A DNA stretch of 64,000 bases. It comes from Oikopleura dioica (lineage: Eukaryota > Animalia > Chordata). Positions within the stretch are counted from its first letter, which is position 1. Each line of letters begins with the position of its first letter. A program made the translations under genes and the position numbers. The notes under the pieces were generated by a model. The model saw only the letters and a program-made list of their open reading frames with translations, did no database searches and was not told where the DNA came from. The stretch covers positions 8,246,001 to 8,310,000 of the forward strand of contig OU015568.1 of assembly GCA_907165135.1 (NCBI GenBank), in the 5' to 3' direction. Of the stretch, positions 37,161 through 62,452 are shown one piece after another.

Positions 37161-37282
37161 CGTCGTAATTATCTATTTAAGCCGACTACTAGGACACTAA
37201 TGTAAACACCGGAAGGTCACCGGATGTTATTCTCTTCCGGTAAACTTCCGGAAAAGAATAACATCCGGTGACCTTCCGGTGC
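37161..37282 (+). repeat. Left terminal inverted repeat with internal 75-nt hairpin (37207-37281)
   Basis: CGTCGTAATTATCTATTTAAGCC...; one mismatch versus reverse complement of 62331-62452. Confidence 0.95.
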
Positions 37283-39055
37283 GTATGGTTAAACTTCCTG
37301 TTATGAAAATAAAATGAAAACATAAACAAAAAAAAAAGCATTCGTCTTCATCGTCTTCTTCTTCCATCGTCTATGAACTTTTTCCACGTGACCATATAGT
37401 TTCTAGAATAATTAAAAGCATATATTTTTTATTTTATAAACAGCATTCTTATTAATTTATCGTCATGACTAACTTCCCGATTCCTTGTCCGATTTGTAAC
37501 GAGCAGGTAACCAACAACCGAATAAAGGGGGATCACATGGAAAAGGTTCATAGGCAGGGTCTCCGCGAAAAACCTTAACCCTAGCCGGCCAAAAATGATT
37601 TTTCTCGGGTACCAGTCAAGATACTCCATATTTGGCGTCAGGGATTTACCTGCAAATAAGAATATACAAATGATAAAGGTCAAATTATATGGTCTTGGGG
37701 AATTAGAGTAAAGCCTGTCTATCAAGATGTAATAGAAAAAAAACCGCTCCAGAATGATTTTCTAAGAAAATTTACGTTTAATATTGTGAGGTACTTCCGC
37801 GTAGACCCTAATCAAAGACGATGGCGAAGATACCAAATTTGGGTGCGAGAAGACGATGAAAGCGACGAAATAGAATGCAGGATAGATTAAAATTTTACTT
37901 TTACCTTAGTGGGTCAGGGAGCACCATCTATGGATCACTGGTCAAAAAATCAGCACTTAGGACGAAGTGATTTTTAACTTAAAAAAAAGAAAGAAACTGT
38001 CGGGTATTTATCGATTAGCTACCCTTTTGCCACTTAGCAACTATTCTCACTTAGGGTTAGGCTTAGGAAACAGCCTTACTTGGAGAATTACTCCATGCAT
38101 AATCTTCGATCTCTCAGTCCTGACTCGTGGTTCCAACCTGGGCTCGGCAACCTGTGTGGAAAACCTGAGTCAGGTCCGAAAGCTCTCTCCAAAGTTCAGA
38201 ATAGATAAGATAGGTAATTATACGTCGACTAGTATAATAGTCTAGTCCTCTTCTAGTTGGATGACTTTATCCGATGCTGAAACCAAAACCCAAATCCAAA
38301 CCAAATTTTAATCTCAGACAGATGGAACTGGGACAAGGATACCCAAGCGTTCCGCGAACGAAGGCGAGGACGTCGAACTGAGCTCGACATGAGCGAAAGG
38401 AACGGTGATAGAGATTAACTCTGCGTGGAAAGGAAAATTGTATGTGTAGTATATTAACCTTTTCCCGCCAGGGTGCATCTTGACAAAAATTACTTTTTCC
38501 GAGAAGTACTTTGACTTTTGCAAAAGTTAAAATTTGTAGAGCTACGTTTTGTTTCCAAATTTCCTGAGTCCGAATTTCCGGACATTTTTTGGATTTTGCG
38601 GTTTTTTAAGTGGGACACTGCAAAATCGACCATGGTCAGAATTTCTGGGCAGATTCAAATTATTTTTATCCGTATACCATCATTTTTAGAATAAAAATTT
38701 TAGAGGCTCATATTTCAAGCGATGCGCCTCCTGTCGTGCATTTGGCAGATTGACTTTAGAAATTTTTGTTATAATGATCAAACGCTTTTCTTGAATTTCT
38801 GAAAAACTCTTAAAACGACGCTTTAAATAGCTTTGAGGTATACATAAAAATAATCAGCTAAGTCTCATTTTTTTTAAAATGAAAACAATCTTGATCAAAA
38901 GTCTATCGAATATCTAGCAACTCTTAAATCTTCAATCTAGAATATCGATTTCTCACTCTTCCTTAGAAATTTCGTTTATGTCGCTGGAATCAAACATTTG
39001 TGCGTTGAACAAGAATTGTATTTGGAAATTTTACTTCCGACGGAAGGCGCGGCGC

Positions 39056-40530
39056 ATGGCAACTCATGCGTCGCAAGTTGTAAGCGCACTGATCTCGCCG
39101 ATAAAACTCGACAAAGATAAGGAAACTTCATCAGATATCAAATTGAAAATGTTCGATCTACCTTCTAATCCTGACGGCATCGCCCAAGCTTACAACCTAA
39201 CAAACCAATTTATACTTTTACTGGGAGCACTCTGGACTACTATCAGAGACCAATACATTTTGGCGGTCGATAAAGAGACCTATCTTCGTCGAATTCGTAA
39301 GTTATTCTTGTTCCACTACTATCAATCATCTCATTTTTAAGGTGGTCTTCTCGACCATTTGGACTTTGACATGCCCCTTGTGGCAAGACTCGAAGACATG
39401 ATTGAGAACTCAGACGGAGAAATTGACATTGACGATTCCAGCGACGCATCCTCCTCCTCCGAAGATGACTCTGATGATGATGAAACCTACTATCCTAGCT
39501 CTCCTCCAAAAACAAGATGTAAGAGTCAACGTTCAAGCAAATTCTTGATTGTTTTTTTAGCTGCCAAACGAAGATTGTTCGAATCTGATGAGCCGGAACA
39601 AAAGCGACCAAAAATTGACCAGCTCGATCAGCTTGAAAATGATGAAGTTGACAATGGAAGCGATAATGGGGAAGACATCGACGCTGAGGCTGAAGAGGAC
39701 GACGCTGCTGGAGATTCTGACGTTTTTGAAGCTGACGACGCAGCTGAAGAAAACGACGCAGCTGAAAGCAACGATGATAGCGGCGCTGATACTGGTCCTG
39801 ATAGCGAGGAAGAATGGGCGACTCGTCCAAAGTCGCAAAAGAATCAACTTTGGACTCAAACGACCTGGGACATGTGCCAACCTTCCACGAGTCGAGCATC
39901 AATGTTCACACCGCCGCCGACGCCTCCTCCATTTGACTCTCCCCGTCCTCAACCATTTGAGTTTCCTTCTCCGGCTGGACGACCATCTGTTATTCAATCT
40001 CCTCGGGTTCCCGAATTCCGACCGATTTCCATTCAACAAATGATGGCTTCAGCAATCCCAACAAGTAAATATTTTTATTTAAGCTTCTATTAATTTTCAT
40101 CAAGTTGATTTGACTGGAGATTCGTCTTCCGACGATGACGATCAAGTTGTCCCAGGTAATTTGAACTTTCGAATCCCTCTCTAACAATTATCTAGCGATA
40201 GACATTGCCTACGCTGATAGTACTTTCGACTCCTTGGACGGCGAACAATTCCAGCAGATCGTCGATGAGAACGACGCTCAAGCAAGAGCAGAAGAAATCC
40301 GTCAGCTGCAATCGGAGCTGGAGAATCCGTCAAGAGGAGGTACTCCTGATACGATTATCGATGCTTGCTTATCGCCGTATCTTTTAGGGGAGACTCTGGA
40401 CACAGCACTCAGCATGGGACTCATCACACGAGAAACTACCGAGTTCATCGACGAAGTTGCTGAGATGATGGAAGACGAAGAAGATCCTCCCGCCACCGTG
40501 ACGCCAGAAAAAACCTTTACTGAGCTTTGA
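39056..40530 (+). CDS. Polinton accessory acidic protein (~435 aa, 5 exons) with RxL, SP/TP sites and SIM-like motif
   Basis: GT-AG introns 39297-39341, 39519-39560, 40065-40104 and 40156-40195 join into one open frame. Confidence 0.7.
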
Positions 40531-40697
40531 ATTCCTTCCTCTTTGCAAACTCTTCTGTTTCCTTACTTCCGGTGATTTAGTTTCTTTCAATAAACATGCT
40601 TTGGTGAACTTCCGTTGTTTTTTTAGCACTGATTTGAGGCATTGATTTAGGGCATAAAAATGAGCTTGATAGCTCAAAAATTATCATTAAAAAAAAA

Positions 40698-40943
40698 ATG
40701 AATCGCAGCGCACCAGTCTCAGAAGAATTTCCTTTTCTCGACTTGATTTGCAAAATCAACGAAGAAATCATCAGCCAGAACAAAGCTGCTACAACCCTTG
40801 TTGCACTCGCGATCGCTGGTTACTGCTGGATGGCAATCAAGATTTGCAAGATGAAGCCAAAGAAGAAGTCGACTGCGAAAAGAGCCTCGATCGTCGTTAC
40901 TGATTCTGATCCTGCTTTGTCTCCTCAAGATTCTTGGGTATGA
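40698..40943 (+). CDS. Small single-pass membrane protein (81 aa)
   Basis: TM LVALAIAGYCWMAI followed by basic KMKPKKK. Confidence 0.55.
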   Translation: MNRSAPVSEEFPFLDLICKINEEIISQNKAATTLVALAIAGYCWMAIKICKMKPKKKSTAKRASIVVTDSDPALSPQDSWV

Positions 40944-41344
40944 TATGCTTTCTATCCTGCTCGAACTCCTGCTTGTTAAACACGTTGGATTCTTTTTTTA
41001 GTTTTTATTGTGTCTGTGATTTGATAAATATGATTTGGAACTGTTAAGAAATATATATTTCAATAAATTTGAACATGATTAGGCACTTGAAGTTAAATAT
41101 TTATGGCAAAAAAATATCAGTTTTTGGCTAGTTTTGAAGTGGCAGGTTGTTATTCGCTTGCAAAAAAGATTAGCTGTTTTACATAAGGTTTTATCGTTGA
41201 CGTTTCAATTATGTTTTATCAATAAAATATCAGTTATGGCTAGTTATGAAGTGGCAGGTTACAATACGCTTGAATTAGCTAGTTTCAATAAGGTTAACGT
41301 TTCAATTATGTTTTCCGTGAAAAGTAAAATGATCTTGCAATATT

Positions 41345-41796
41345 CTACTCTTCCATCATGTCGATCTGGTCACCATCACATTCCATCTCTTCATCCACGC
41401 TGTCGACTTCCATTTCCTTGTTCACGCTGTCGATTTCCATTTCCTCGTTCTCGGTATCTACATCCATTTTCGCGGTCATTTCCCATTCCATTCCTTCGTT
41501 GTTTATTTTCATCTTGGCCATCATTTGTGTTGCTAGCTCGACATCCTTGTTGAATTCTACTTCAGCTTTAATTTGATTAACTTTTGAATTTCGGCTGTTA
41601 AAATACCTTTGATAAGGATGAATAGGTCGGAAACTGAGCGAAGATTTTCGTTTTTGATTGCGTCTATGATCTTTCGCTCCCACGGGGTCAAGGGGCGCTC
41701 GGAATCGAGTTCTCTCATCTTGCTTCGCTCTGCGCTTTTTTTGGCGCCAGTTTGGCTGGTCCTGCGGTGCGCGCGCCTGCCGCAGGCTAGGTTCAC
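41345..41796 (-). CDS. Hypothetical 2-exon protein, basic N-terminus and EMEVD-like repeat tail
   Basis: ORFs 41557-41796 and 41345-41683 separated by a short GT-AG intron-like gap; EEMEID/KEMEVD/EEMECD repeats. Confidence 0.45.
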
Positions 41797-42008
41797 GCGT
41801 GCGGGGGTTGAAAAGGCGAATCAGCGGAGCGCCCGCTCAAGGGCGGGCCAATTTCAAGCACGCACTTTGCCCTGCACTTGCATCTTCGAAAGAGAATCAT
41901 TCTGCAGAGAAACAAAAAGAGAAATATCGAAATTTCCTTTCTGCCTTTCAATTTAAATTCTTAGGCTGACTATAAATAATAAATAGAGATAAACTGTCAT
42001 ATATCAGC

Positions 42009-42127
42009 AGCCGCAAGCGGCTTGTTGATTAAGCAAGTCTTTCTGATTCTTATATACGCAGTCGCGAGCGACTTCTTGATTTTTTTTTAGCTCATCTGAT
42101 TTTTTCTTTACGCAGCCGCAAGCGGCT
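42009..42127. promoter_or_regulatory. Three spaced 14-bp dyad motifs AG(C/T)CGC(A/G)AGCG(G/A)CT
   Basis: Copies at 42009, 42060 and 42114 between divergent genes. Confidence 0.45.
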
Positions 42128-42198
42128 TCTCGATTTTAAATTATCTTCTCTTCAACTCTTTACTTTTAATAAGAGCTAAACAAGTTTTGGGTTCAGAG

Positions 42199-42825
42199 AT
42201 GAGACGATTCGTTGTTCATCTCCCAGGTGGAGACGATGATGTCTCGACGACTGACTTTCCCTCGACGTCCAAGACTGGCTTACCCTGGGAGTCCACCACC
42301 AGCACAGCCGAGGAAATGACAAGGACTTTGTTAGACAATCCAAAGTCGGACAACTCAAGCTTGCTCAAAGCAGCCTGCTTGCAAGGTAACCGCGAGTGTA
42401 TGAGCGATAGTTTCAATTATCTTACTTAGCCGCAATCGGGTCAACGATCTGGCTCATACTCATTCTGATGTACAGATATCGAGTGCGTATAAGAACCTGG
42501 ATCTGGGACTGCAAGAGAATTCTCACCCAGGGAAGTCCTCACCCGAAAGGTAAATTTCAATTCTTTAGTCTCGAACTCATACAAGAATAATAGATAACAG
42601 AAAAGACGAAACAATCAAAGAAGACGAAGGTTCAAGAAAGGACGAGGGCAAAAGGAACGATGAAGACATCCAGGAAGTTGACGAGAGCAAGCCAAAGAAG
42701 AAGAAAAAGTATGAAGAATGGGGTCCAAACGAGAAGCACGAGTTCGTGATGCCCGAGTGGCTCAAGTGGAACGGTACCTGGCGAAAGAAAAAAGAAGATG
42801 GAAAGCCAAAAATTCAGGAAGTCTG
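42199..42825 (+). CDS. Single-pass membrane protein, T/S-rich N-terminus, charged tail, 3 exons
   Basis: Spliced reading ...KAACLQ|AAIGSTIWLILILMYRYR...|DNRKDETIKEDEG...PKIQEV*. Confidence 0.5.
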
Positions 42826-42889
42826 AAAAGAACTGTTGACATGAAAGTTTTTGAATGATGATAGCGAGTTTAATGCAATACTTTTTCAT

Positions 42890-43350
42890 TTAAAAGACTG
42901 AATCTCGGGTGATTATGTGCGACTCGTGGACTGACTACAGATTCGATTACATCGCCCAAGACGAGCTTGAAGAATTTTGCTCCTGCCAAGGTAAAGCCTT
43001 TCAATAAAGAATTTTTGCTATTTACGACTCAAGCCACATTTACTAAAAGCTTTCATACAGTCATTAAATTTGAGAGATATATTTCTACAGAGCTCCATTT
43101 ATACGATTCTTAGAGCCGGCGATGAAAGCAAAGATCGAGGAGATTATGAACATCTCAATTCTCGCTGCCGTTGGCGTCTCGATCCTGATGATGATCATCC
43201 TCGTCTGCCTCATCGTCAAGAAGCAAAAGAATGAACCTCCACGAAGAAGTAAGCAAATATCAAAAAAACTTTATCTCAATTCAACTTAGACTTGCTGATC
43301 TCACGACCTGTTCATCTTCCAGAAGACATCTAAACTCCTTGAAAACAAAG
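42890..43350 (+). CDS. Single-pass membrane protein, multi-exon
   Basis: CDSWTDYRFDY..FCSCQ|EPAM..ISILAAVGVSILMMIILVCLIVKKQK. Confidence 0.5.
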
Positions 43351-43652
43351 TAAGTTTTTTGAAATTATTTTCTCTCATTTCTAATTCACTTGAAGGCTCT
43401 CACATCTTTGTTGCCGCTCTTCTTCTCATTCCTGTGTGCGAAACGACAATCCTCCTTCTTCCATCTCTCAACCTTTGTGTGCTTCTCCCGTGTGCCGATT
43501 CAATACCTTCTTTCTTCCCAATCTACAGGACATTCACTCTCTTCCTCCGTGTGCCATCCTTTCAATATCCCGTGTGCCGCCATCAATTTCTTCATCTAAA
43601 AGGACACTCTCTTAAACATTTATTTCTATTTAATTTCAGAGAGTAAAAAAGA

Positions 43653-44630
43653 ATGATGGGTCGAAGACCAATACCAACGATTTCTCCTACGACAGCTACA
43701 ACAGAAACAGGCCTGGAAACAACAACTTCTCCTGAGACAGACAGCGGCAAGACAGACGTGATTTTTTTGTATCTCATACGCAGAACAAGGGTTCAGACAA
43801 TCTTAAAGAGTTTTCTTTTTCACGAATTTTCGAACCCAGTTCAGACTGCTTAGTTAAGTTTTTCTCAAAAGAGGTTGCTCTCATCGTAGTGATTTTGGTC
43901 TGGCTTTACTTCGTTTTTCGTCTTGTAATTCAAGGTGAATTGATTTCCTGCTCCGTAAAAACTAAAATTGAGTTTCAGCCATTGTCCATGTTATTACCAT
44001 CCGACACGCTCGTCAGCCAGAAAATCAGCCACCAGCAACAGAACCGCCAGCAAGTCGACAATCAGAAGCTCATCAGCCACAAGGCAGCCTACCAGGTTTG
44101 AGATGTCCTGAAAAACAGCTTATTATATGATATTTAGTACAATCTCCTTCTCCTGAACTCGAGTGGGACGGTTCATTTGACGCCTTGCCCCTTGACCTGT
44201 CCTCGACCGCTCCAAGATCGAATACCAATCTCCTCACTCCGTCTTCTGCTTCCCCTGCTGCCAACAATCCGACTACTGCGACACGCGATCCGACGGTCAA
44301 CTCTGCTGCTTCCGCTCTCAATCTAACTCCTGCCCGTCAAACTGACAATTCCGCCGCTCGCCTTTCTGCTCGCAAACCAAGTGCCGCTTCTTCAATTGCT
44401 ACGCCTTCAGTTTCGCCAGCAAACCCTGCCACTTCCGGCCTCCGAAAAGCTCCAAAGAAAACTTCCACCCGCCTTGCCGAGCCAAAAATCACAAACAGTC
44501 AACCGACCTCCATGGAATGGATCAGTTCGCACGACTTCCGCCGCGACAACAAAGACTCAAACCAAGCGAGACGTTGAGCAACCAGGTTAAAGACACCAAA
44601 AGAAAATTGAACTAACAAACATTCTAGCTC
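43653..44630 (+). CDS. Mucin-like single-pass membrane protein with Pro/Ser/Thr-rich tail, multi-exon
   Basis: PTTATTETGLETTTSP; VALIVVILVWLYFVFRLVIQ|AIVHVITIR; low-complexity tail. Confidence 0.45.
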
Positions 44631-44891
44631 GAGCAGTTCGCCAGCGTAAACAGACGTCCTCCCTGTCGATCAACCATTCCCGGAAAAAATATTAGCTGCC
44701 TTTTCAAATGCCTTCCTTTTCTTTGACTGATAATATAGAACATAAGCTATCTACCGAAAGTCCAGATAAAGAATCTCAGAGGTTTGCAGGAATATATACA
44801 AATATTTTATGCATAAATACTATAGAAACATCAAAAATGAAAAGTTAAGGGAGTTTAAACGCAAATCTTTATATTATTGGCCGGAAGGTAG

Positions 44892-46115
44892 CCAAATTTG
44901 GAAATATGTATATTGATATACATGTTTTCTTTTTCCTCAGAGAAAATTTTTGAAACGAGATATGATATTTTTCTTTCTTGATTTTTGAAGCTTAAGAACT
45001 ACTCTTTAAAAGCCATCATTATAAAAATCTCTGGCATGAATGGTTCCACCAGAAAATTTGCGTCAAAATTGACCGAAAACCGAGAATTTTCGGAAAAATT
45101 CTGAAATTTCGATTTTTCGAAAACCATCAAAATATTCGCTTAAATTGTCTCTTATGGATGTTTTTCACCAGAAATGGCAAAAAAGGCTAGAAACAACAAA
45201 CCGTGAAAAAATCATCCAAATTTGGAAATATGTATATTGATATACATGTTTTCTTTTTCCTCAGAGAAAATTTTTGAAACGAGATATGATATTTTTCTTT
45301 CTTGATTTTTGAAGCTTAAGAACTGCTCATTAAAACCCATTATTATTAAAATCTGTGGAATGAATGGTTCTTCCAGAAAATTCGCGTCGAAATTGGCCAA
45401 AAATCGAGAATTTTCGGAAAAATTCTGAAATTTCGATTTTTCAAAAAACCGTCGTAATATTCGCTTAAATTGATCCTTATGGTTGTTTGGTCACTAAAAA
45501 TGGTAAAAAACATCTAGAAACAACAAACTGAGAAAAAAATATTTGATTTTGGAGAAAAAATCATCCAAATTTGAAAATATGTATATTGATATACATGTTT
45601 TCTTTTTCGTCAGAAAGAAATTTTGAATAGAGATATGATATTTTTCTTTCTTGTTTTTTGAAGCTTGAGAGCTACTCTTCAAAAGCCATCATTACACAAA
45701 TCTGTGGAATGAATGGTTCCACCAGAAAATTTGCGTCAAAATTGACCAAAAATCGAGAATTTCCGGAAAAATGCTGAAATTTCGATTTTTCAAAAACCGT
45801 CGTAATATTCGCTTAAATTGATCTTTATGGTTGTTTGGTCACTAAAAATGGTAAAAACAGCTAGAAACAACAAACTGAGAAAAAATATTTGATTTTGGAG
45901 AAAAATCATCCAAATTTGAAAATATGTATATTGATATACATGTTTTCTTTTTCGTCAGAAAAAATTTTGAACAGAGATATGATATTTTTCTTTCTTGTTT
46001 TTTGAAGCTTGAGAACTACTCTTTAAAAGTCATCATTACACAAATCTCTGGCATGAATGGTTCCACCGGAAAATTCGCGTCAAAATTCACCAAAAATCAA
46101 GAATTTTCGGAAAAC
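44892..46115. repeat. AT-rich tandem array, ~3.6 units of ~325-350 bp
   Basis: ccaaatttg(g/a)aaatatgtatattgatatacatg recurs at 44892, 45216, 45565 and 45910. Confidence 0.85.
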
Positions 46116-46451
46116 CGAAAACTTTCATTTTTGGGAAAGAAAGTTCCACTTTCATTTTTCTTCATCAAAGAAAATGTTTATAAACAATATGCAGGGTCGA
46201 TTGCTCTGTCTTTGCCTCAACGATAAATAAATTACTTTTGAAATTTTATTTCTTTGTTTATTTGGAGACTGGCAGAAAGTGATGTACTAAAGAAACATGT
46301 GGAAAGTTATTGAGAATGATAAAGCAGTGCCATACATCCGAGACGAGGGAAAAAAATGCAAAGAAAAAGAAAGATAGTGAGAAAGGCGCAGAAAAGGGGA
46401 GAAAAGCAGGACATGGATACTCGTCAATCGAGTAAGGGAGTCTTCGTTGTT

Positions 46452-46985: not shown

Positions 46986-47189
46986 TTTCTGCTTGCAAAA
47001 AGAGTGTTTCGATTTTGATACTTCTGCCCAAAACTCTCTGCTTTTATCAGTATCTTCATTTCTAGCGCCTCCATTAGGCCATATGGCACCTGCAAGATTT
47101 AACGCAGCTTAAATTTCATGCACTGGATTTTATTGAGAACAGCTTGCCTAGGTGCACAGGGAAAGACAGATTGCAGCGTTTAAAAAGTT

Positions 47190-47801: not shown

Positions 47802-47989
47802 TTTAGATGAAAAGTTTGCGAGCACGAGTTTTTTTATAATTCGAGGTTGAGCCCAAACTCTTGATGGCGCCGAGTTTCGCGGCGTGCTTTCAGATTTGTG
47901 GCGTTCTTTCCGGTTACGCAGTGTGCGTTCAGAGCTCAATTGCGACGCTAGAAATTCAAAATAAAAAGTCTGGGTAGAGAAGAAAAAGA

Positions 47990-48493: not shown

Positions 48494-48629
48494 TACAGTT
48501 TTTCTCCATACCTTTTTGTTGATTTTTATTTATAAGCAGGAAGTTGACCTTGTTGTATTGGTTGAGCCGGTGGCGCAGGTGAACTCGAGTGGAAAACGAT
48601 AATAAAAAGAGCAATCGTTTTGATTGAGC

Positions 48630-53712: not shown

Positions 53713-54264
53713 TCAGAGGCTCCGAGACTTTTTTGGTGGTGGAACAGCTTGGTAGTCCTCGTTGATGTAAATCGTTCCTGTTTGCTCGGGCTGCGTTAGA
53801 ACATCATCGTCGGGAGTTGTACGCAAGTTCCATCCAAGAACGGACGGAGATTGGAAGACATTTTCTTGACCGCAGATGGGACAGTCATGAGATGGCTCTT
53901 CTTCAGGTTGGAATGGCATAGTGTACCTGAAAATGTACGCTTTTGGCTCATTTCTCATCTGTTCAGAGAGTGTTTGAAGAGCCTCGCGTTCGATCTCGAT
54001 CAGTAGCTGCTTCTTGGTGTGGCGAAACTCGAGCAGGTGAAGGAACTCGACTTCGAGCTGATGTTTAGTTGAAACAGGCAGACGGAGCTCAATTTCTTCT
54101 CCTGAGAATCCATCAGGAAAAAATTTATCGTCATTCGAGATCACTGAAGCGTCGATGTAGAAAACTCCTCCTTTATTGGCGGTGTGAAAATCAAAGTCTT
54201 TGATTGTAACGATCATTTTGCGAATGAGAGAAGAATCGATTTTGCTCCTGAAGTTCAAATGCAC
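53713..54264 (-). CDS. Tandem paralog A (unknown beta-rich domain plus CxxC)
   Basis: MIVTIKDFDF..GGVFYID..EIELR..EFLHLLEF..CPIC. Confidence 0.7.
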   Translation of the reverse strand: MHLNFRSKIDSSLIRKMIVTIKDFDFHTANKGGVFYIDASVISNDDKFFPDGFSGEEIELRLPVSTKHQLEVEFLHLLEFRHTKKQLLIEIEREALQTLSEQMRNEPKAYIFRYTMPFQPEEEPSHDCPICGQENVFQSPSVLGWNLRTTPDDDVLTQPEQTGTIYINEDYQAVPPPKKSRSL

Positions 54265-54504
54265 TGGTTAACCAGTGCTCTTTTCCTAGCCTTGACACCG
54301 CTTCTACGCTTCCTTTGTTTATAAATAAAAGATCCTGCTTCAAAAAACTACAAAAAGATTTATCACCGACATTTATTTTCACCGAAAAATATTTACAAAG
54401 GAAAGCACGACAAAATAAAAGTAAAGTAGAGCAAGCACCACAGTTTATCTAAGAAAGTATAGAAAAGCAAAGCACCACAAGAAAAGACAGTTTCATTTGA
54501 AGAT

Positions 54505-54960
54505 TCAATGATTATACTTTGTCACCTTCCATTCTTCAAGCTTGAATATTGGTGATCCACAGTTTGAACAATCCTCTGGAGGAGTCTGCTCGAGTTGCAT
54601 CGGGAAGTTGTATTGAAACGTCCAGCAACCAAAAATTGCTTCCCCTTTTTTTCCCTCGGAAGTGAGCACTTTTTCAAGAAGAATTATTGGTACGGGCTTT
54701 TTTGAGTGACAAAATTCCAAAAGCTGAAGGAATTCCGTCTCAACCTCTTGTTTTGTCGAGACTGTTATCCGGAGATCAAGCTCTGCTGCTGGGAATCCAC
54801 CAGGAAAGTGAACGTCGATAAGCGGCATGCACATGGCATCAATGTGAAAAACTCCTCCACAACCTTTATGCTCAAAGTCGAAGGCTTCAATTTGAACCAT
54901 AAAATCAGCTGAGGAGACTTCGGAACATCGGAACATTTTTTTTGTTGAGAATGAGATCAA
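54505..54960 (-). CDS. Tandem paralog B
   Basis: MVQIEAFDF..GGVFHID..ELDLR..EFLQLLEF..CSNC. Confidence 0.7.
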   Translation of the reverse strand: MISFSTKKMFRCSEVSSADFMVQIEAFDFEHKGCGGVFHIDAMCMPLIDVHFPGGFPAAELDLRITVSTKQEVETEFLQLLEFCHSKKPVPIILLEKVLTSEGKKGEAIFGCWTFQYNFPMQLEQTPPEDCSNCGSPIFKLEEWKVTKYNH

Positions 54961-55159
54961 CTAAGAATTCTTCTATGAGGTTCAAAAGCGCTGGATACTC
55001 AGTGCCTGCTTTTGACCACTGATTCTACTCGAGCGGAACTTCGCGTCTTGAATGTTTATAAATAAAGGAACCTGCTTGAAAGAACGACAAGGAAATAAAA
55101 AAAACACCAAATTTTATTACTCGAGTAAAGAAGCAGAAAACGATCAGAAAAGGAAAAGA

Positions 55160-55750
55160 TTAGATGTCCATTTGTTGCTCGGAAGCTGGCTGAATCGGAG
55201 TTGGTTGTTCGTAAGCTGGCTGAATCGGCTGAATCGGAGTTGGCTGGATTGGAGTTGGCTGAATGGGAGTTGGCTGGATGAGAGTTGGCTTGATAGGAGT
55301 TGGCTGAATCAGAGTTGGCTGAAGCGGAGTTGGCTGGATCGGAGTTGGCTGGATCGGAGTTGGCTTGATCGGAGTTGGCTGAATGGGAGAAAGCGGAGCC
55401 GGAGTTGGCTGAATGGGAGAAAGCTGGGTCGGAGTTGACTGAGTCGGAAGTCGACTGAATCGGAAAGTGTAGGAAGCGGGGATATTGTGCTCTCTTTCCC
55501 AGTCGGATTGCTTTGACTCGGAAGTAAGGTTGACGGACGCAGGTTGATGAGATTCTGTGAAGGAAAGAAGAGTAGCGAACGTTTCAGAAATTTCAGCTGC
55601 AGTCCTTTCATACATTCTCAAGTTGATTTCTGAAGCAGGTTGGGTATAGTCAAAATGACTCTCAAAGCCTGGGATAAAAGTTCCCTTGACTTTGAAAAAT
55701 CCGCCTCCGTTGTGTGATCGAAAAGTGAAAGATTTAATCGTGACAAACAT
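55160..55750 (-). CDS. Tandem paralog C with (IQPTP)n tail
   Basis: MFVTIKSFTF..GGGFFKV..EINLR..TFATLLSF; 15-bp unit repeats at ~55180-55445. Confidence 0.7.
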   Translation of the reverse strand: MFVTIKSFTFRSHNGGGFFKVKGTFIPGFESHFDYTQPASEINLRMYERTAAEISETFATLLSFTESHQPASVNLTSESKQSDWEREHNIPASYTFRFSRLPTQSTPTQLSPIQPTPAPLSPIQPTPIKPTPIQPTPIQPTPLQPTLIQPTPIKPTLIQPTPIQPTPIQPTPIQPIQPAYEQPTPIQPASEQQMDI

Positions 55751-55851: not shown

Positions 55852-57162
55852 TTACAATAGCGTTTTTTCGACTTGTTTATGTTCGTCAATCGTAAGTTTG
55901 ACAGACACAATTGACCATATAACAATGTGATAGTCATCGTCGTCATCTAGTGGTTTGTTGAAATCGAATGTGAAGGAGAGCCATCCTTGTGATATTTCCT
56001 CGCCCTCAAATTCATGAGCGAAAATTGCATTGCTCTTGTACGCATCCATGGATGTCACATAAGACAAGTTGCTTTGAGAGATTCTTCCAAGAGCATTTTG
56101 AAATTTCCAATAAGGGAGAATTGGATACTGATTCGTGATTTTCTAGAAACATGATAAATTTTTTTTATTCTTCTATGTTATCTTACCTGAGGATATCCAT
56201 GGAGCGACTGCCCATTTAATGTGACGTTTATTTGAGTAAGATCCTGATGAAAACTGAAATTTGTGGACTCAAAAGCATCCGATCCAAACAAGGCATCTGT
56301 TTTGATGAGTCCAAAGAACATGTACGCGGGTGTATTTCCACCAGTAACATTGAGCAGCTGAACTTGCTTACGACCTTTTGGTAAAGCCATTGTCTTTATC
56401 ATAGTGTCATTGAATTTGTAGGAGATCGGTTTTGATTTGATTCTCGCAAAATGATTTCTCAAGCTTGTAGAGGACACATATTCAACCATTGCATAGGCAT
56501 CTGTTATTTTGAGAGCTTCTCCAGCCGGCAACTTATCATTTGGGTCGCTTCCAATAAAAATTGTAGAGAACTCATGCTTTAGACGGTAGAGCGTCAGTGA
56601 TAGATCAGTGTTGAGAGGAAGAGGTTTATTTTCAAGGAAGAATCCGTGAGTAGGTAAGAAGATGAGTTCGTAAACATAATTCCCATCGGAGTTGACAAAG
56701 CAGCCTGGTCTCCTACCGTCTCTGATTTCTTCCTTAGCCGCATCTGTCGCAAGTGTCTCAAAATTGTACTCGTCATAGTACCCTTCGATCTGGAAAGCAG
56801 TCATCACATATTGAGGATCGTAGTTTGTCAGCTTTGTCAAATAATCAGCTAGCATATAATGCGCGCTAAGAGAAAAAGTAAGGCTAATCTATGAACAAAA
56901 ACTCTTACTTTGAATTGGAGTTATCAATTATCTGAGAATTCACGGCAACTTCTGTTTTTCCAAACTGTTTGCTTGCGAATCCATTGCAGGGGATGTAGTT
57001 CTTGTCAAGTTCGATCGTGAAATGAATCGCAATGTTGTTTTTGACGAGAAAAAGGTTTGGATCAGCATCGAAGTGGAAATGAAGACGTCCGGTTAAACTA
57101 TCTACCTCTCTGGGATAGTGACGCTTTACGACTTTCTGGTCGTAGTACTCAACTTCTATCAT
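55852..57162 (-). CDS. MCP: Major capsid protein (double jelly-roll type), 407 aa, 3 exons
   Basis: Introns 56143-56186 and 56866-56908 restore frame; Maverick-capsid-like YMLADYLTKLTNY..EGYYD, LPLNTDLSLTLYR, TPAYMFFGL..F; position next to protease. Confidence 0.75.
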
Positions 57163-57213: not shown

Positions 57214-57633
57214 TCACCAAATTTGAGAGAGTTTGTCAAAAAGAAGTTGATCGTTCTCAGTAAGATTTTTAGAAAAAATAGAGGAAAGTTTTTTCATAGA
57301 ATAAAGAGAGCGAAAGATAACATAGAAACAGACGTAGAAACCACAGTAAAATGACGCATCTGATTGAATTTTTTTATAAAAATATTTTTTACGATCACCG
57401 AAAAAGTCGGTTAATTCTTTTGGATATTTTCCTAATTTCAAACTATCAAAAATCTCGATTTTTGACTTTTCAATACGAAGTGCTATCCAGTGAGAACCTT
57501 TTGACTTTTCCGGTGAAAGATTAACAACGAGAAAAGCAGGATATTCATTAAGAGTGGAAAGAGTATCAATAGAGAAAACACCAAGGAAATTTTGTACACG
57601 TTCTAAACGTTTAGCAATATAGTAAGAGTTCAT
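57214..57633 (-). CDS. PRO: Adenain-like (clan CE) maturation protease, 139 aa
   Basis: VVNLSP..GSHWIAL..IFDSL..IQS..YCGFYV (H, D, Q, C catalytic order). Confidence 0.88.
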   Translation of the reverse strand: MNSYYIAKRLERVQNFLGVFSIDTLSTLNEYPAFLVVNLSPEKSKGSHWIALRIEKSKIEIFDSLKLGKYPKELTDFFGDRKKYFYKKIQSDASFYCGFYVCFYVIFRSLYSMKKLSSIFSKNLTENDQLLFDKLSQIW

Positions 57634-57845
57634 GCTCTTTTCTTTTTGGACGACTTCTTTGACTTTTTCAAGTCTTTTGTTGTAAAATTTCTTTTTTTCT
57701 TTGGTTTTGAGGAAGGTTTTTTTCTTGCTGGAGTAAGTTTTAATTTGGTTGGAGCTTTTTTTGATTTTCTTTTTCCTGCGCCCGACTGAGATTTGGGAAA
57801 CCATTTTTTTGGTCGACTTTCGAGCGCGGAAATAATGGTTTTCAT
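57630..57845 (-). CDS. Small lysine-rich putative core/DNA-condensing protein (71 aa)
   Basis: Very K-rich; QSGAG motif; ATGA overlaps with both neighbours. Confidence 0.6.
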   Translation of the reverse strand: MKTIISALESRPKKWFPKSQSGAGKRKSKKAPTKLKLTPARKKPSSKPKKKRNFTTKDLKKSKKSSKKKRA

Positions 57846-58207
57846 TCTCTTGTTGTAATCTGGATCTGCAGAGAAAATTGTTGGACAACGTGTTCACTTT
57901 CTAAGTCGATTGAAAATGTCGTATCCCGCCAGTTATATACGTTTAAAGGGAAGAAAAGGGAGCGTTGGTCGGAAAAATGGCACCACCTATCGTTTGGACG
58001 GATTTGACCCATCATGAGCGTATTCGGTTCTCCATAGCAAGAAGCAATTGAGTTACACGTTATGAAAGCAATGCCAACGTCACGTGGAGTGGTCATAAGA
58101 TTACAGACAGCGCTTACAATTTGAACACAGTATTCTTCGTTGTTATCAAATAAAATTTCAGGGACTTTTAGTTCCTTGCTTCTTGTTCCGAAAAGATTCA
58201 ATATCAT
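57842..58207 (-). CDS. Probable minor capsid (penton-like) protein, ~121 aa
   Basis: Position between integrase and protease; alternating hydrophobic beta pattern (YCVQIVSA, FITCNSI, FFPLN, FSIDL, LQIQI); short for a penton. Confidence 0.45.
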   Translation of the reverse strand: MILNLFGTRSKELKVPEILFDNNEEYCVQIVSAVCNLMTTPRDVGIAFITCNSIASCYGEPNTLMMGQIRPNDRWCHFSDQRSLFFPLNVYNWRDTTFSIDLESEHVVQQFSLQIQITTRE

Positions 58208-59474
58208 TGGCGACAAGATTGAGTTCGAAATAATACTTGATTCGAGGTTGACGATTTCCTTCTTCGTCAGCAATTTTATACCAAACTATACCAGCTCTTT
58301 GACGGATGTCCGTGATGATGTAAACTTCGTCTGACCAATTTTGCGTGTATCCTTTTTCGAAAAGTTCTTTTTTCTTTTTTACTCTCACAACGTTGCCAAC
58401 TTTTAGTCTGGGCTTGACTTTTAAGTCAATGTCGGGATATAGTCGAGTGAAAACCTGTGCTCTATTTTTTGATGAGACTTGGTTTGGAGCCATGCCAATT
58501 GAACGATGAGGAGTTGAATTATATCCTTTTGTTATAGCCGGAAGAACATCGATCCAAGTTTTAGTCCTGTTTCTTTTCATGAAAAGATGTATACGTTTTC
58601 TGAAAGTTTGAATCGCACGTTCTGCTATCGCTGCCTTCATTTTACTTTTGATACTATAGTGATGCAGTCCATATCGATCCAGAATTTTGCGCACATTTGA
58701 GTTGTAGAATTCCAGACCTTCATCTGTAATCAAAGAATTCGGCCACTCAATAAAATCTTGAAATATGTCGTTGAGAGCGTTTGCCACATCCTTCCCAGAT
58801 TTGGTTTTGAGAGGTCTTGTCCAAACATAACGTGAAAAACAGTCGATAATGAGAAGAATAAAAACGTGATGTCGATTAGAGTATTTGAATTTTTGGTAGT
58901 CAATAAGATCACCCTGGAATATTTTGAATGCAGTGTCAACAATAAATCGTCGACGAGGAAATCGCTTTTTGGATATGCGACGATGAGTACTAGACACTTT
59001 ATTCTTCCGGAGAAATTCCGCTACTTTCGCTGAGAATGCTGGAGCGCTTGCCACGTTTTCGTACAGGGCTTGAATCTGATCCTCCAGAGCTGACTTCTTC
59101 GGAGGTTGGACTTTCGGATGAGCTTGAATTTCTTCTTCGCTTCGATTTTTTTGATTTTGAATCGACTTCGTCTGAGCTGATGTTTTCGCTATCTGATTCG
59201 CTTGAGGTTGAAGGACGTCTTCGCTTACTCTTTTTTGATTTTGATTTCTCTTCCTCGTCGGTTTCCGAAGACGCTTCGCTTGAGGTTGAATGTCGTCTTC
59301 GCTTCTTTGCTTTCCTTTTTGATTTCTTGTCGTTACTCGACTTCTTGTTTCGCTTTCTGGATCTTGACCTTTCAACCTCCGACTCTGACGAGTCTTCGGT
59401 AAAACTGTCGCATCTGATCTTTGATTTGACTCTTGTTGACTCAATAGTTTTGCACTCCGGGTATTTCTTCTCAT
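58158..59474 (-). CDS. INT: Retroviral-like (rve) integrase of Maverick type
   Basis: FQGDLID, IDCFSRY, LITDEGLEF, KAAIAER, YNSTPHRSIGMAP; no C-terminal chromodomain evident. Confidence 0.93.
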   Translation of the reverse strand: MRRNTRSAKLLSQQESNQRSDATVLPKTRQSRRLKGQDPESETRSRVTTRNQKGKQRSEDDIQPQAKRLRKPTRKRNQNQKRVSEDVLQPQANQIAKTSAQTKSIQNQKNRSEEEIQAHPKVQPPKKSALEDQIQALYENVASAPAFSAKVAEFLRKNKVSSTHRRISKKRFPRRRFIVDTAFKIFQGDLIDYQKFKYSNRHHVFILLIIDCFSRYVWTRPLKTKSGKDVANALNDIFQDFIEWPNSLITDEGLEFYNSNVRKILDRYGLHHYSIKSKMKAAIAERAIQTFRKRIHLFMKRNRTKTWIDVLPAITKGYNSTPHRSIGMAPNQVSSKNRAQVFTRLYPDIDLKVKPRLKVGNVVRVKKKKELFEKGYTQNWSDEVYIITDIRQRAGIVWYKIADEEGNRQPRIKYYFELNLVANDIESFRNKKQGTKSP

Positions 59475-60225
59475 GTTTCTTTTCGACTGCTTCGAAAGTA
59501 TTGTCTCTGGCGATAATATCGAAATTCTGCTTGAAATCGTTGTATGGTACGATGCAGGCCTTCATTCCGCTAACTGAGAAAACAACCGGATAATCGGTGA
59601 ATATATCTGTATAGAGACGATAGCTCGAGGCATGGCCTCGGGGTGATTGATCCAGAAACATGTACGGATATTGTTTGTTCTTGTTTTCTTCCGTTGCTCT
59701 TTTGTAAGCTTTTAGAAGTCCAGCTTGACTACATGCACGTTTATTAACTGTCCCATCAAGACAGTTTCTGCATAGAAAGGTAGCGTTGCAGTTGAGCTTG
59801 ATGTTTCTCCCGAATTTTCCTTGAGCATAGTTATTTTGCGTCATTATCATCACATTTAAATTCCGCTTCCCACTTGTCACTCGAAACAGATGATCGATCG
59901 CTTGACTTTGAATCGCTTCTTCATATAAATCATCGAGTACAATTGTTGAATGTGACGGAATCTCGTCAATTTCCTCTTGAGAAGGAAGTCCAACCCTGTA
60001 GCTTACAGGGACACAAAGATCATCCCACTTCACTGGTTTTTCTTCCAAAAAACAAGGATAATAATAGAAAACTCGTTTAGTCTTCTTTTGAAATAGATGT
60101 CTGTTCAAAAGAACTTGTTTTGCGATATAAGTTTTTCCTGCTCCAGAAGATCCACTGAGCAAAATACGAAAAGGATATGTGAAGGTTGCGTCTGGTAGAA
60201 GTTCTCCATTGATAACGGTGCTCAT
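58999..60225 (-). CDS. A32-like DNA packaging ATPase with long R/K/S-rich tail
   Basis: GSSGAGKT, IVLDD, IMTQN..RNIKLN, YMFLD. Confidence 0.9.
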   Translation of the reverse strand: MSTVINGELLPDATFTYPFRILLSGSSGAGKTYIAKQVLLNRHLFQKKTKRVFYYYPCFLEEKPVKWDDLCVPVSYRVGLPSQEEIDEIPSHSTIVLDDLYEEAIQSQAIDHLFRVTSGKRNLNVMIMTQNNYAQGKFGRNIKLNCNATFLCRNCLDGTVNKRACSQAGLLKAYKRATEENKNKQYPYMFLDQSPRGHASSYRLYTDIFTDYPVVFSVSGMKACIVPYNDFKQNFDIIARDNTFEAVEKKHEKKYPECKTIESTRVKSKIRCDSFTEDSSESEVERSRSRKRNKKSSNDKKSKRKAKKRRRHSTSSEASSETDEEEKSKSKKSKRRRPSTSSESDSENISSDEVDSKSKKSKRRRNSSSSESPTSEEVSSGGSDSSPVRKRGKRSSILSESSGISPEE

Positions 60226-60449
60226 TTCTCTTTTGCTTCAATTTTCTTTTGCTCATCCTTTTTATTTATCAAAAGAAAGCATTGGATCGGAACTGAAAAT
60301 AATCAAATCTTAAATTTTATTCTCATATCGTAACGGATACACAACGGAAGTTGTTGATGACATATTAATAAACACTGAACTTCCGAGTTTATATTTATAA
60401 ATACCGGAAATAAGTATTTATTCACCATCGAAGACTCGATGGCGAGAAC

Positions 60450-61352
60450 ATGGAGGTGGACCCCGGTCATGAGTCCGACGGCGAGCTTCCTGACGAGGGG
60501 CCAATTGAGGACCCTCTTGTTCCTCCTGAGGACGAAGATGACGAGGCCGAGGACGACGATGTTCGTGAGGTCATCGACGATCGTGAGGACGACGACGTTC
60601 ATGAGGTCGTCGAGGAACCCATCGAAGTCGCCCCCTGGGATCTAGTTGACCCCGACTTTTTGTCAAACAAGCACCTTGCGGATCGAGGATTCATAAATAA
60701 GGGAGAGAAAGCCGGCGAAGCGGAGCATCTTGCTTACTCTACGTGTTGGTTGTCTGCAGCCGGTATGTGTATCTTTGTTCGAAATTTGCGAACGCCGTTC
60801 GTAATCTTGTGAACGCCGTTCGCAACGGAGAAAATCTTACCATGAGTGTTCGTTTCAAGCATTTTCTGGTATAAAACTCATTTGGTTGACAGGAGCAGTG
60901 TTTCTCTAGCGCTCGGACACGTGATGAAAAAAGTTGTGAACGATTATTGGTCAAAATTTTCTCCTTGTGAACGGTGTTTACAAGATAACGAACGGCGTTC
61001 GCAAGTTGTGAACGAAGCCGCTTGCTCCCTTAAAAATAACTGAACTCGTATTTAAGTGAATCTTCTTCTCATTGCAGGCTGTATTCGAAAGCTGAAGCCG
61101 GCCAACTGTCTCATCGCAGAGATGCAAAAACTGACATTTGTCAACAGTAAGTCTTTTTTTTTTATTCCGCGACGCATATTTAACAACCTGCTAAGCGGTT
61201 CAAGCACTCGATGATGTCGTCAAGGAAACAAAAAGGTTACTCTGGGAGAGCGGTTTTAGATGGACTAAAACTGGACTCGGAGTAACCGAAGGTCTACGAG
61301 GGTTATTGAAAAATTTTTCCGAAAGGTGTGGTTCATTAATAAAAATATCTTA
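60450..61352 (+). CDS. Acidic hypothetical protein, multi-exon (may extend to ~62170)
   Basis: D/E-rich exon 1; in-frame GT-AG joins at ~60763-61077 and ~61147-61195. Confidence 0.45.
60772..61020. repeat. Small inverted-repeat (MITE-like) insert in an intron
   Basis: ttgcgaacgccgttcgtaatcttgt and reverse complement acaagataacgaacggcgttcgcaa; arms extend ~55 bp imperfectly. Confidence 0.55.
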
Positions 61353-62330
61353 ATCAAATTCTCAATATGAAATCTTTTATCGTTAGAAGAAAGATTCTTA
61401 ATCAAATGAACAATGAGTATTTTTTCAAATAAGAACCCCAAATAAGTGACGGTGAAAATAAGCAGAAGATCTTGGAAGATTTTCGTTGTTGCGAGTCTTG
61501 CATGGTAATTCGCCCTTTTTTTTTTCTTGTTCTAAGATTTTTAGGAGCCCTTCTTCTGTGAAATTTTCATTGAAGACGCCTTGGACAGCAAAGATATAAA
61601 TTTGCAAGAAATAGTCGCGAAGGGAGAATGCCTCCTGTGTGGCAATGAGGAAATACGACCGGCAGAATATTTATTCCTTGTCGTGAACGGAAGGAAACGC
61701 ATGAGATATATATATATATTTTTTTTTTTTGCAAATATGAACGCTTATATAATATGCCAAAAAGATATTTTGAGGAGAATGGACGATGGGTGCAGCGAAA
61801 AGATGTGGTGAAGGGCGATTCAATTCGCCTGATGGGTCATGATTACAAAATGATTGGTAAGAGAGATTATATATTCGGAACATTTTTATTGATTTAGCAA
61901 AAAGCACGTATAAAATGCAAAAAAATCAGGAAGCTCACACTTATGTTGACTTCCAGGTGGGCTTAAAATAATATCGCACGAGTTTTATCTTCATAGCCTT
62001 CTTTATTATTTTTACGTGAAATTATTCAAGCCAACATAAGAAAAAAAAGAAAAAAAGAGCGCGAAAACTTCTGGCTCGAAGACTGGATGACTATCTCCGC
62101 TCGACGGACGTCACGTGGGAGCCATCTTCTGAGGATCACGTCCTACTACTCTCCCGAGCGCGAATTCAAGATTGAGAGATTTATTTTTATATTTACTTAT
62201 TTGGTGACTGAAGTTTTTATCTAAATATTTATTTATTTGGTGACTGAAGTTTTTATCTAAATATTTATTTGTTTATAATAAATTATATATTTTCACTTAT
62301 AATAAAACAAGACTGATTTAAACCGGAAGT

Positions 62331-62452
62331 GCACCGGAAGGTCACCGGATGTTATTCTTTTCCGGAAGTTTACCGGAAGAGAATAACATCCGGTGACCTT
62401 CCGGTGTTTATATTAGTGTCCTAGTAGTCGGCTTAAATAGATAATTACGACG
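62331..62452 (-). repeat. Right terminal inverted repeat with internal hairpin
   Basis: Ends ...TAGATAATTACGACG followed by TSD GACACC. Confidence 0.95.

What the first reader, a model, noticed from the sequence alone, without database searches (positions are those of the whole stretch)
37161..62452. Intact-looking 25.3 kb endogenous Polinton-type virus with a large accessory region
Seen: exact boundaries (6-bp TSD GACACC, TIRs differing at 1 of 122 positions) and uninterrupted frames for polymerase, ATPase, integrase, protease and capsid. Established: this gene set defines Polintons/Mavericks, and having MCP, mCP, ATPase and protease together implies virion potential. Inference: this is a recent, possibly active tunicate polintovirus. 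About 11 kb of its left arm is accessory cargo, arranged loosely like an adenovirus early region beside a compact late cassette.
Basis: partly seen in the sequence, partly recalled or inferred. Interest (0 to 1): 0.88.

Follow-up and report, generated by a model that had tools for sequence, protein, structure and literature searches.

The report
Polinton virus-like element in Oikopleura
This is a complete-looking 25.3 kb Polinton/Maverick virus-like transposon in a larvacean tunicate genome, a known kind of element whose polymerase and capsid genes are each interrupted by tiny, probably spliced-out, host-style introns rather than being single open frames.

Summary
The boundaries are exactly as reported: 122-nt terminal inverted repeats (121/122 matching) at 37161-37282 and 62331-62452, flanked by the 6-bp duplication GACACC. 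It is a Polinton/Maverick. It has a protein-primed family B polymerase, an rve integrase and a double jelly-roll major capsid protein (structure match E~1e-14). It also has a P-loop ATPase and an adenain-like protease, both only weakly supported. "Uninterrupted frames" holds for ATPase, integrase and protease only. No frame exceeds 476 aa. The polymerase has 4 interruptions and the capsid gene 2. All six are 38-44 nt of extra DNA that shift the frame without losing coding sequence. Two are shared with relatives, and Oikopleura gene models read across a third. Host introns are about 47-50 nt, so these are most likely mini-introns, not decay. A penton gene is not established; there is only a 121-aa candidate. 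The 11.3-kb left arm has no recognisable domain or nested insertion, but it has many more long plus-strand open frames than chance. Its content is unknown, and the adenovirus "early region" analogy is untested. The host is probably Oikopleura dioica. Verdict: a new member of a known kind, and activity is unproven.

The parts
37155..37160 (.). Left target-site duplication GACACC
   Evidence: Read directly; identical to 62453-62458.
37161..37282 (.). Left terminal inverted repeat, 122 nt. Its inner ~75 nt (37207-37281) is itself a near-perfect palindrome.
   Evidence: 99% complementary to the right arm; one mismatch; 33-bp hairpin, -41.8 kcal/mol, z = -12.4, 0 of 200 shuffles as stable.
37283..48629 (+). 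Left arm, 11.3 kb of unknown content. Includes a run of consecutive plus-strand open frames at about 38.9-44.6 kb, a ~340-bp tandem array x4 at 44892-46180, and ORFs 46452-46985(-), 47370-48062(-, Cys-rich) and 47990-48493(+).
   Evidence: No Pfam or PHROG family. No nested long TIR/LTR pair. Plus strand 37283-44890 has 11 ORFs >=100 aa against 2.0 in shuffles, 0/200. Codon score is coding-like for a few ORFs only. Tandem array.
48630..52559 (+). [quoted passage not shown]
   Evidence: The largest piece finds 22 relatives, including O. dioica models at 69-74% identity. 8 of 14 aligned relatives match Pfam PF03175, and the profile hits E. coli Pol II at E = 1.6e-4. Pieces map consecutively on relatives. 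Spacer sizes are 40, 44, 40 and 38 nt.
52622..53167 (+). 181-aa ORF downstream of the polymerase, function unknown.
   Evidence: The O. dioica polymerase models end before it. No family. Codon score 0.16.
53713..55750 (-). Three tandem paralogous ORFs (53713-54264, 54505-54960, 55160-55750). The last has a tail built from a 15-nt repeat.
   Evidence: 27-41% pairwise identity, E down to 1e-25; alignment A3. The only kin are Oikopleura and unnamed assemblies. Repeat.
55852..57162 (-). Double jelly-roll major capsid protein gene (about 400 codons), interrupted 2 times by 43-44 nt frame-shifting spacers.
   Evidence: 137 relatives. The pieces together cover residues 8-394 of the 397-aa relative P0026. 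The AF2 model of P0026 has pLDDT 92.6. Foldseek matches SGIV, PBCV-1, Sputnik and mavirus MCPs at E~1e-14, and adomavirus, virophage, NCLDV and adintovirus entries. Spacers.
57214..57897 (-). Cysteine protease-like ORF (227 aa), adenain/Ulp1 type, with a lysine-rich N-terminus.
   Evidence: Over the C-terminal domain, Peptidase_C5 E = 0.0013 and Peptidase_C48 E = 0.007, both below Pfam thresholds. No PDB sequence hit.
57842..58207 (-). 121-aa strand-rich ORF between integrase and protease; penton (minor capsid) candidate by position only.
   Evidence: One 88%-identical 121-aa relative. AF2 pLDDT 57.5. Only weak Foldseek hits (best E = 0.0066), mostly small jelly-roll capsid proteins. Expected position from PMC4028283.
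58158..59474 (-). rve-family (retrovirus-like) integrase, 438 aa, one open frame.
   Evidence: Pfam rve E = 3.4e-10, 40.5 bits against a cut-off of 32.6. Foamy-virus and Ty3 integrase cores at E = 2.5e-5 to 5.6e-4 over residues 184-333.
58999..60225 (-). P-loop ATPase-like ORF, 408 aa, with a Ser/Lys/Glu-rich tail; putative packaging ATPase. Its last 473 nt overlap the integrase ORF in another frame.
   Evidence: Walker A and B motifs are visible in the translation. Only P-loop-level family hits, including Pox_A32 at E = 0.036. No informative PDB hit.
60226..62330 (.). Right sub-terminal region, 2.1 kb, with no established gene. Contains an acidic 120-aa ORF at 60450-60812(+) and a 70-nt inverted pair at 60773-61017.
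   Evidence: no excess of long ORFs.
62331..62452 (.). Right terminal inverted repeat, 122 nt.
62453..62458 (.). Right target-site duplication GACACC.

Best explanation
The region is one integrated copy of a Polinton/Maverick (polintovirus-type) element in a larvacean tunicate genome, most probably Oikopleura dioica. Shown: 122-nt TIRs and a 6-bp TSD, a protein-primed family B polymerase gene, an rve integrase gene and a double jelly-roll major capsid gene. Weakly supported: an adenain-like protease and a P-loop ATPase in the same minus-strand cassette. Inferred from what is established for Polintons: the polymerase copies the linear element from its TIRs by protein priming, the integrase inserts it and makes the 6-bp duplication, and the capsid module may package it. 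Special to this copy: the polymerase gene carries 4 spacers and the capsid gene 2, each 38-44 nt, that break the reading frame. I read these as host-type mini-introns. That would mean both genes are expressed from the nucleus through the host spliceosome, and that the lineage has lived in larvacean genomes for a long time. The 11.3-kb left arm and three tandem paralogous genes are lineage-specific content of unknown function.
For: Boundaries. Polymerase. Integrase. MCP. Protease. ATPase. Intron reading: all six interruptions are 38-44 nt of extra DNA with no coding residues lost. Relatives P0001 and P0023 carry a 14-residue read-through insert at a shared junction. O. dioica gene models P0003 and P0009 run across a third junction. 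A host carboxypeptidase gene in the same window has a 47-nt insert where its paralogue is continuous. Published O. dioica median intron length is 48-51 bp (PMC8008620). Host: named relatives are O. dioica only, and the window-encoded P0163 sits on a 17,092,476-bp contig, the length of the PAR scaffold.
Against: Splicing was not shown: no transcript data were available, and no intron predictor was at hand. The penton protein expected of a virion-forming Polinton was not identified. ATPase and protease matches are below curated thresholds. Pfam does not match PF03175 in the window's own polymerase pieces; it matches only their relatives. The ATPase and integrase frames overlap by 473 nt, so one gene model there may be wrong. 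Some relatives lack the spacers, so the spacers are not universal to the family.
Confidence: 0.85

Rival explanations
1. A dead, decaying copy: the six interruptions in the polymerase and capsid genes are mutational insertions that inactivated them, and the element is a genomic fossil.
For: Neither gene is a single open frame, and every piece runs into a stop. Several metagenomic relatives are continuous across the same junctions. No expression data exist here.
Against: Six independent insertions all falling within 38-44 nt, with no deletions, no stops inside the pieces and no lost residues, is not what decay looks like. Two inserts recur at the same junction in relatives at 59% and 91% identity. 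Annotated O. dioica models read across another. Three further genes are fully open, and the TIRs are 121/122 identical with an intact TSD.
Confidence: 0.1
2. A transposon without a virus stage: the element moves only within the genome through its polymerase and integrase. Its capsid gene is a retained relic, and the set of virion genes is incomplete.
For: No penton gene could be established. ATPase and protease support is weak. Introns in the capsid gene and diverged copies elsewhere in the same genome (69-83% identity) fit long vertical residence.
Against: The MCP coding sequence is complete relative to a 397-aa relative, whose model is confident and fully double jelly-roll. A conserved 121-aa strand-rich ORF sits where a penton gene is expected. 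Introns do not prevent nuclear expression.
Confidence: 0.3
3. A composite: the 11.3-kb left arm is not cargo of the element but captured host DNA or the remains of unrelated insertions, so it is not an 'early region'.
For: No domain or homologue was found for any left-arm ORF. It contains a 1.3-kb tandem array and low-complexity acidic stretches. Codon scores are mostly near zero.
Against: No nested TIR or LTR pair or internal boundary was found. The plus strand has 11 ORFs >=100 aa against 2.0 expected, 0/200 shuffles, while the host flank shows no excess. GC content matches the rest of the element.
Confidence: 0.25

Closest known systems
Polintons/Mavericks of animals (self-synthesising DNA transposons; 'polintoviruses', PMC4028283)
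   Same: Protein-primed family B polymerase plus rve integrase, long TIRs, 6-bp TSD, 15-40 kb size range, and a double jelly-roll MCP together with an adenain-like protease and a P-loop ATPase.
   Different: The polymerase and MCP genes are split by six ~40-nt spacers. The MCP is short (about 400 aa) and only 8-15% identical to catalogued viral MCPs in structure-based alignments. The penton was not recognised. There is an 11.3-kb arm and a triplet of paralogous genes with no kin outside Oikopleura-like sources.
Adintoviruses / MELD viruses (PMC8502044)
   Same: Animal-associated, with the same polymerase, integrase and virion-protein modules. An 'Adintovirus sp.' entry and a 'MELD virus sp.' entry are among the MCP fold matches.
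   Different: There is no evidence here for a free viral genome. None of the membrane-active accessory gene types described for adintoviruses turned up in Pfam scans of this element. Phylogenetic placement was not done.
Introner-bearing Maverick-Polinton-like proviruses of dinoflagellates (PMC11957031)
   Same: Full-length, TIR-flanked elements with polymerase, integrase and capsid genes that carry introns acquired in the host genome.
   Different: Those introns are copies of identifiable introner transposon families in protists. Here the spacers are 38-44 nt, the size of ordinary larvacean mini-introns, in an animal. I did not test whether they resemble one another.
Mavirus-type virophages
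   Same: Double jelly-roll MCP fold (mavirus MCP E~2e-12), rve integrase, protein-primed polymerase, cysteine protease.
   Different: Virophages are free viruses of protists that depend on giant viruses. This is a germline insertion in an animal genome, larger, and with introns.

Membership tests
Polinton/Maverick | [quoted passage not shown] | tested here: met
   Relatives of the largest piece match PF03175 (8 of 14). The profile hits a solved family B polymerase at E = 1.6e-4. Pieces map consecutively on relatives. The window's own pieces do not reach Pfam on their own.
Polinton/Maverick | Retrovirus-like (rve, DDE) integrase | tested here: met
   Pfam rve at 40.5 bits, above the 32.6 cut-off. 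Foamy-virus and Ty3 integrase cores at E down to 2.5e-5.
Polinton/Maverick | Long terminal inverted repeats | tested here: met
   122 nt, 121/122 matching.
Polinton/Maverick | 6-bp target-site duplication | tested here: met
   GACACC on both sides.
Polinton/Maverick | Double jelly-roll major capsid protein | tested here: met
   The window pieces cover residues 8-394 of a 397-aa relative. Its model (pLDDT 92.6) matches DJR MCPs at E~1e-14 with probability 1.0.
Polinton/Maverick | Single jelly-roll penton (minor capsid) protein near the MCP gene | tested here: inconclusive
   The 121-aa ORF one gene upstream of the MCP is conserved in one relative. The model is low-confidence. Only sub-threshold jelly-roll-type fold hits were found.
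Polinton/Maverick | FtsK/A32-type genome-packaging ATPase | tested here: inconclusive
   Walker motifs are visible and the position is right, but only P-loop-level matches were found (Pox_A32 E = 0.036).
Polinton/Maverick | Adenain/Ulp1-type cysteine protease | tested here: inconclusive
   Peptidase_C5 at 18.9 bits (cut-off 21.3) and Peptidase_C48 at 16.7 bits (cut-off 20.7) on the same domain.
Adintoviridae (exogenous animal virus) | Free linear genome or virions outside the host chromosome | not testable with these tools
   Only one integrated copy is in hand.
Adintoviridae (exogenous animal virus) | Polymerase and virion proteins cluster with adintovirus clades | not tested
   The fold matches include adintovirus/MELD entries among many other DJR viruses.
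Autonomous (intact) element | All core genes able to yield full-length proteins | tested here: inconclusive
   ATPase, integrase and protease are open. The polymerase and MCP need removal of 4 and 2 spacers. Splicing is supported indirectly but was not observed.

The most novel reading that the evidence does not exclude
A still-functional larvacean polintovirus lineage that has taken on host-type mini-introns in its polymerase and capsid genes. At least one polymerase intron would be old enough to be shared with relatives only 59% identical. Its 11-kb left arm would encode large, multi-exon, lineage-specific protein(s). This would be a virus-like element whose replication and capsid genes depend on the host spliceosome.
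Probability: 0.25. Interest if true: 0.65.

Novelty: new member of a known kind. Interest (0 to 1): 0.45.

Why it matters
Polintons are central to ideas about the origin of eukaryotic dsDNA viruses, yet whether animal copies still behave as viruses is unresolved. This is a complete-looking copy in Oikopleura dioica, one of the most compact animal genomes and one with few DNA transposons described. No paper in the held library links larvaceans with Polintons or Mavericks. The copy gives a well-bounded locus where expression, splicing and presence/absence across the highly diverged O. dioica lineages can be read from existing kinds of data. The six uniform mini-introns also bear on intron gain in larvaceans: some relatives lack them, so the element records gain or loss on a datable mobile sequence. 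For annotation, prokaryote-style ORF calling will report such elements as broken when they may not be.

Tried and rejected
1. Pfam on 60+ ORFs and pieces of the element found only rve above threshold.
2. PHROGs gave nothing useful.
3. Rfam gave no match in the whole window.
4. Single-sequence PDB searches of the polymerase pieces, the ATPase and the protease gave chance-level hits only. The MCP profile found nothing in the PDB by sequence, so structure prediction was needed.
5. Penton search: the 121-aa candidate has only one close relative, the AF2 model is poor, and no fold match reaches E <= 0.001.
6. I first took the 460-aa ORF for the capsid gene. It is the polymerase palm region.
7. I considered that the three tandem paralogues might be pentons. 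Nothing supports this, and they have no kin outside Oikopleura-like sources.
8. I looked for a nested transposon in the left arm and found none.
9. The codon-usage score separates coding from non-coding only weakly, because the training set is small.
10. Another copy of the element elsewhere in the window: none.
Full report
**Observation.** The inverted-repeat search finds one long terminal pair, 37160-37282 against 62331-62453, 99% complementary. Reading the ends shows the element proper runs from 37161 to 62452 (25,292 bp). Its TIRs are 122 nt long and differ at one position. GACACC lies directly outside both ends (37155-37160 and 62453-62458). The extra base pair is the last base of one TSD copy pairing with the first base of the other. 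The inner 75 nt of each TIR is itself a near-perfect palindrome: a 33-bp hairpin, -41.8 kcal/mol, z = -12.4 against shuffles.

**Reading frames.** The claim of uninterrupted frames for all five core genes does not hold. No stop-free frame in the element exceeds 476 aa, whereas a Polinton polymerase needs more than 1000. Three genes are single ORFs on the minus strand: a P-loop ATPase-like ORF (408 aa), an integrase (438 aa) and a protease-like ORF (227 aa).

**Polymerase.** The largest plus-strand ORF finds 22 relatives. Two of them are predicted Oikopleura dioica proteins at 74% and 69% identity. Eight of 14 aligned relatives match Pfam PF03175, the protein-primed family B polymerase, and the alignment profile reaches E. 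coli Pol II at E = 1.6e-4. I searched the plus-strand frames piece by piece. Five pieces map consecutively onto the relatives, about 1290 codons in all between 48630 and 52559. The gene therefore has four interruptions.

**Capsid.**
- A 236-aa minus-strand piece finds 137 relatives in the exhaustive search.
- Together with its two neighbouring pieces, each compared separately, it covers residues 8-394 of the 397-aa relative P0026. That makes two interruptions.
- I predicted the structure of the intact natural relative from an alignment of natural relatives, with the window pieces as separate rows. The model has mean pLDDT 92.6 and pTM 0.88.
- Foldseek matches it to the major capsid proteins of Singapore grouper iridovirus, PBCV-1, Sputnik and mavirus at E about 1e-14 with probability 1.0.
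- In the viral library it matches adomavirus LO7, virophage, giant-virus, adintovirus/MELD and bracovirus-borne proteins, at only 8-15% identity.
- The gene at 55852-57162 (minus strand) is therefore a double jelly-roll MCP.

**Nature of the six interruptions.** For each junction I measured how much DNA lies between the aligned ends, beyond what the relative's residues account for. The script printed counts only. The excess is 40, 44, 40 and 38 nt in the polymerase and 43 and 44 nt in the MCP. Every spacer shifts the frame, and no coding residues are missing.
- Relative P0001 (polymerase, 59% identical) carries a 14-residue run absent from three uninterrupted relatives. Relative P0023 (MCP, 91% identical) carries one absent from P0026. 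Each run sits at a junction shared with the window, and each looks like an in-frame read-through of a 42-nt insert by an ORF caller.
- The O. dioica gene models P0003 and P0009 run straight across a third junction.
- A host carboxypeptidase gene in the same window has a 47-nt insert where its paralogue is continuous.
- Published O. dioica assemblies have median intron lengths of 48-51 bp, with 11-12% non-GT/AG introns (PMC8008620). In another larvacean, 95% of introns are non-canonical (PMC13326754).

Six insertions of one narrow size class, three with support from relatives, in a genome whose ordinary introns are that size, are best read as mini-introns rather than decay. I searched the model exon by exon. 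I did not choose splice bounds or join the exons, and a dinucleotide check would not be decisive in this clade anyway.

**Other core genes.**
- Integrase: Pfam rve at E = 3.4e-10, above threshold. Foamy-virus and Ty3 integrase catalytic cores match at E = 2.5e-5 to 5.6e-4 over about 150 residues.
- Protease: on the C-terminal domain, Peptidase_C5 at E = 0.0013 and Peptidase_C48 at E = 0.007. These belong to the same clan, and both are below Pfam's cut-offs.
- ATPase: Walker A and B motifs are visible, but only P-loop-level matches were found, including Pox_A32 at E = 0.036. Its assignment as the packaging ATPase rests on position and size.
- Penton: Polinton penton genes usually lie next to the MCP gene or one gene away (PMC4028283). 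A strand-rich 121-aa ORF (57842-58207, minus strand) lies one gene upstream. It has one 88%-identical relative of the same length. Its model is poor (pLDDT 57.5). Fold matches are all sub-threshold, though mostly small jelly-roll capsid proteins. The penton is not established.

**Accessory content.**
- Directly downstream of the MCP lie three tandem paralogous ORFs (27-41% identity). One has a tail encoded by a 15-nt repeat. Their only relatives are an O. dioica chr1 model (83%) and unnamed assembly proteins.
- The left arm (37283-48629, 11.3 kb) has no Pfam or PHROG match in any frame tested.
- It has no nested long TIR or LTR pair.
- It holds a ~340-bp tandem array at 44892-46180.
- Its plus strand between 37283 and 44890 carries 11 open frames of at least 100 aa, against 2.0 in dinucleotide shuffles (0 of 200). 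The host flank shows no excess.
- It probably codes for something, perhaps multi-exon genes, but nothing identifies what. The adenovirus 'early region' comparison is an analogy without evidence.

**Host and context.**
- The only named relatives are O. dioica OKI2018_I69 models.
- P0163 has sources and name masked, as the tool does for proteins the window encodes, and it sits on a 17,092,476-bp contig. That is the length of the contig carrying the PAR models P0003 and P0009. The window is probably from that scaffold.
- Diverged relatives on PAR and chr1 (69-83% identity) show that the family has several old lineages in this genome.
- The flanks within about 1.5 kb have no recognisable gene.

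**Comparison and novelty.** All defining features of Polintons/Mavericks that I could test are met: polymerase, integrase, TIRs, 6-bp TSD and DJR MCP. Introns inside Maverick-Polinton-like proviruses have been reported in dinoflagellates (PMC11957031). I found no paper in the held library linking larvaceans with Polintons or Mavericks. This is a new member of a known kind, with an unusual gene structure.

- I did not run the listing of cluster members on relatives, because I could not tell whether that look-up is barred.

Noticed in passing
window 14587-23798: A second TIR-bounded element of about 9.2 kb. Its complex terminal inverted arrays (14587-15500 against 23046-23798, 92-97% complementary) are built from short subrepeats. 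It carries one 1177-aa ORF (16581-20114, +) that is a superfamily 1 helicase (Pfam AAA_12 5e-42, AAA_11 3e-18)..
   Followed up: partly
window 24136-27415: Two 207-nt direct repeats, 100% identical (24136-24342 and 27209-27415), flank a 687-aa ORF (24939-27002, +) with a gag-type aspartyl protease domain (E = 2.8e-5). GC is 0.48-0.50 against about 0.40 nearby. It looks like a short, very young LTR-type element..
   Followed up: partly
window 12077-13581 and 27531-28572 (minus strand): Two paralogous M14 zinc carboxypeptidase genes with different exon structure. One copy has a 47-nt insert where the other is continuous, an example of host mini-introns and intron turnover..
   Followed up: partly
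window 37207-37281 and 62332-62406: The inner 75 nt of each TIR is a near-perfect palindrome rich in TTCCGG/CCGGAA motifs. It forms a 33-bp hairpin as a single strand (-41.8 kcal/mol, z = -12.4). It may be a recognition or origin structure..
   Followed up: partly
window 58999-59474: The ATPase-like and integrase ORFs overlap by 473 nt in different frames. The overlap lies in a low-complexity stretch containing three ~80-nt repeats (59113-59334). One of the two gene models may be wrong there, or a further intron may exist..
   Followed up: no
window 53713-55750 (minus strand): Three tandem paralogous genes share a conserved ~115-aa N-terminal domain and have variable tails. One tail is built from about 16 copies of a 15-nt repeat, and two carry a small Cys pair. 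Relatives were seen only in O. dioica (chr1 model, 83%) and unnamed assemblies..
   Followed up: partly
window 44892-46180: A tandem array of four ~340-bp units (66-90% identity to the reference copy) inside the element's left arm..
   Followed up: no
window 38918-44574 (plus strand): Twelve consecutive plus-strand open frames of 79-250 aa tile 5.7 kb with short gaps and changing frames. The polymerase and capsid genes show the same pattern, so this may be one or more large multi-exon genes. No homologue was found..
   Followed up: partly
window 46452-46985 (-) and 47990-48493 (+): Two divergently oriented ORFs of 177 and 167 aa show weak similarity to each other (pairwise E = 3e-4), so they may be distant paralogues. 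A Cys-rich 230-aa ORF lies between them..
   Followed up: no
window 46314-46590 and 60773-61017: Two small inverted-repeat units inside the element: 49-nt arms at 88% with 179 nt between them, and 70-nt arms at 79% with 105 nt between them. They may be MITE-like insertions or regulatory hairpins..
   Followed up: no
window 1197-1631, 5282-5725, 6915-7526: Host gene fragments upstream: a copine domain (2.6e-36), a C-type lectin domain (6.3e-5) and a SET domain (1.1e-7)..
   Followed up: no
relatives P0001 and P0023 (protein database): Database ORF calls for relatives read straight through a 42-nt in-frame insert, adding 14 spurious residues. Prokaryote-style gene calling on such elements mis-states their proteins..
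   Followed up: yes
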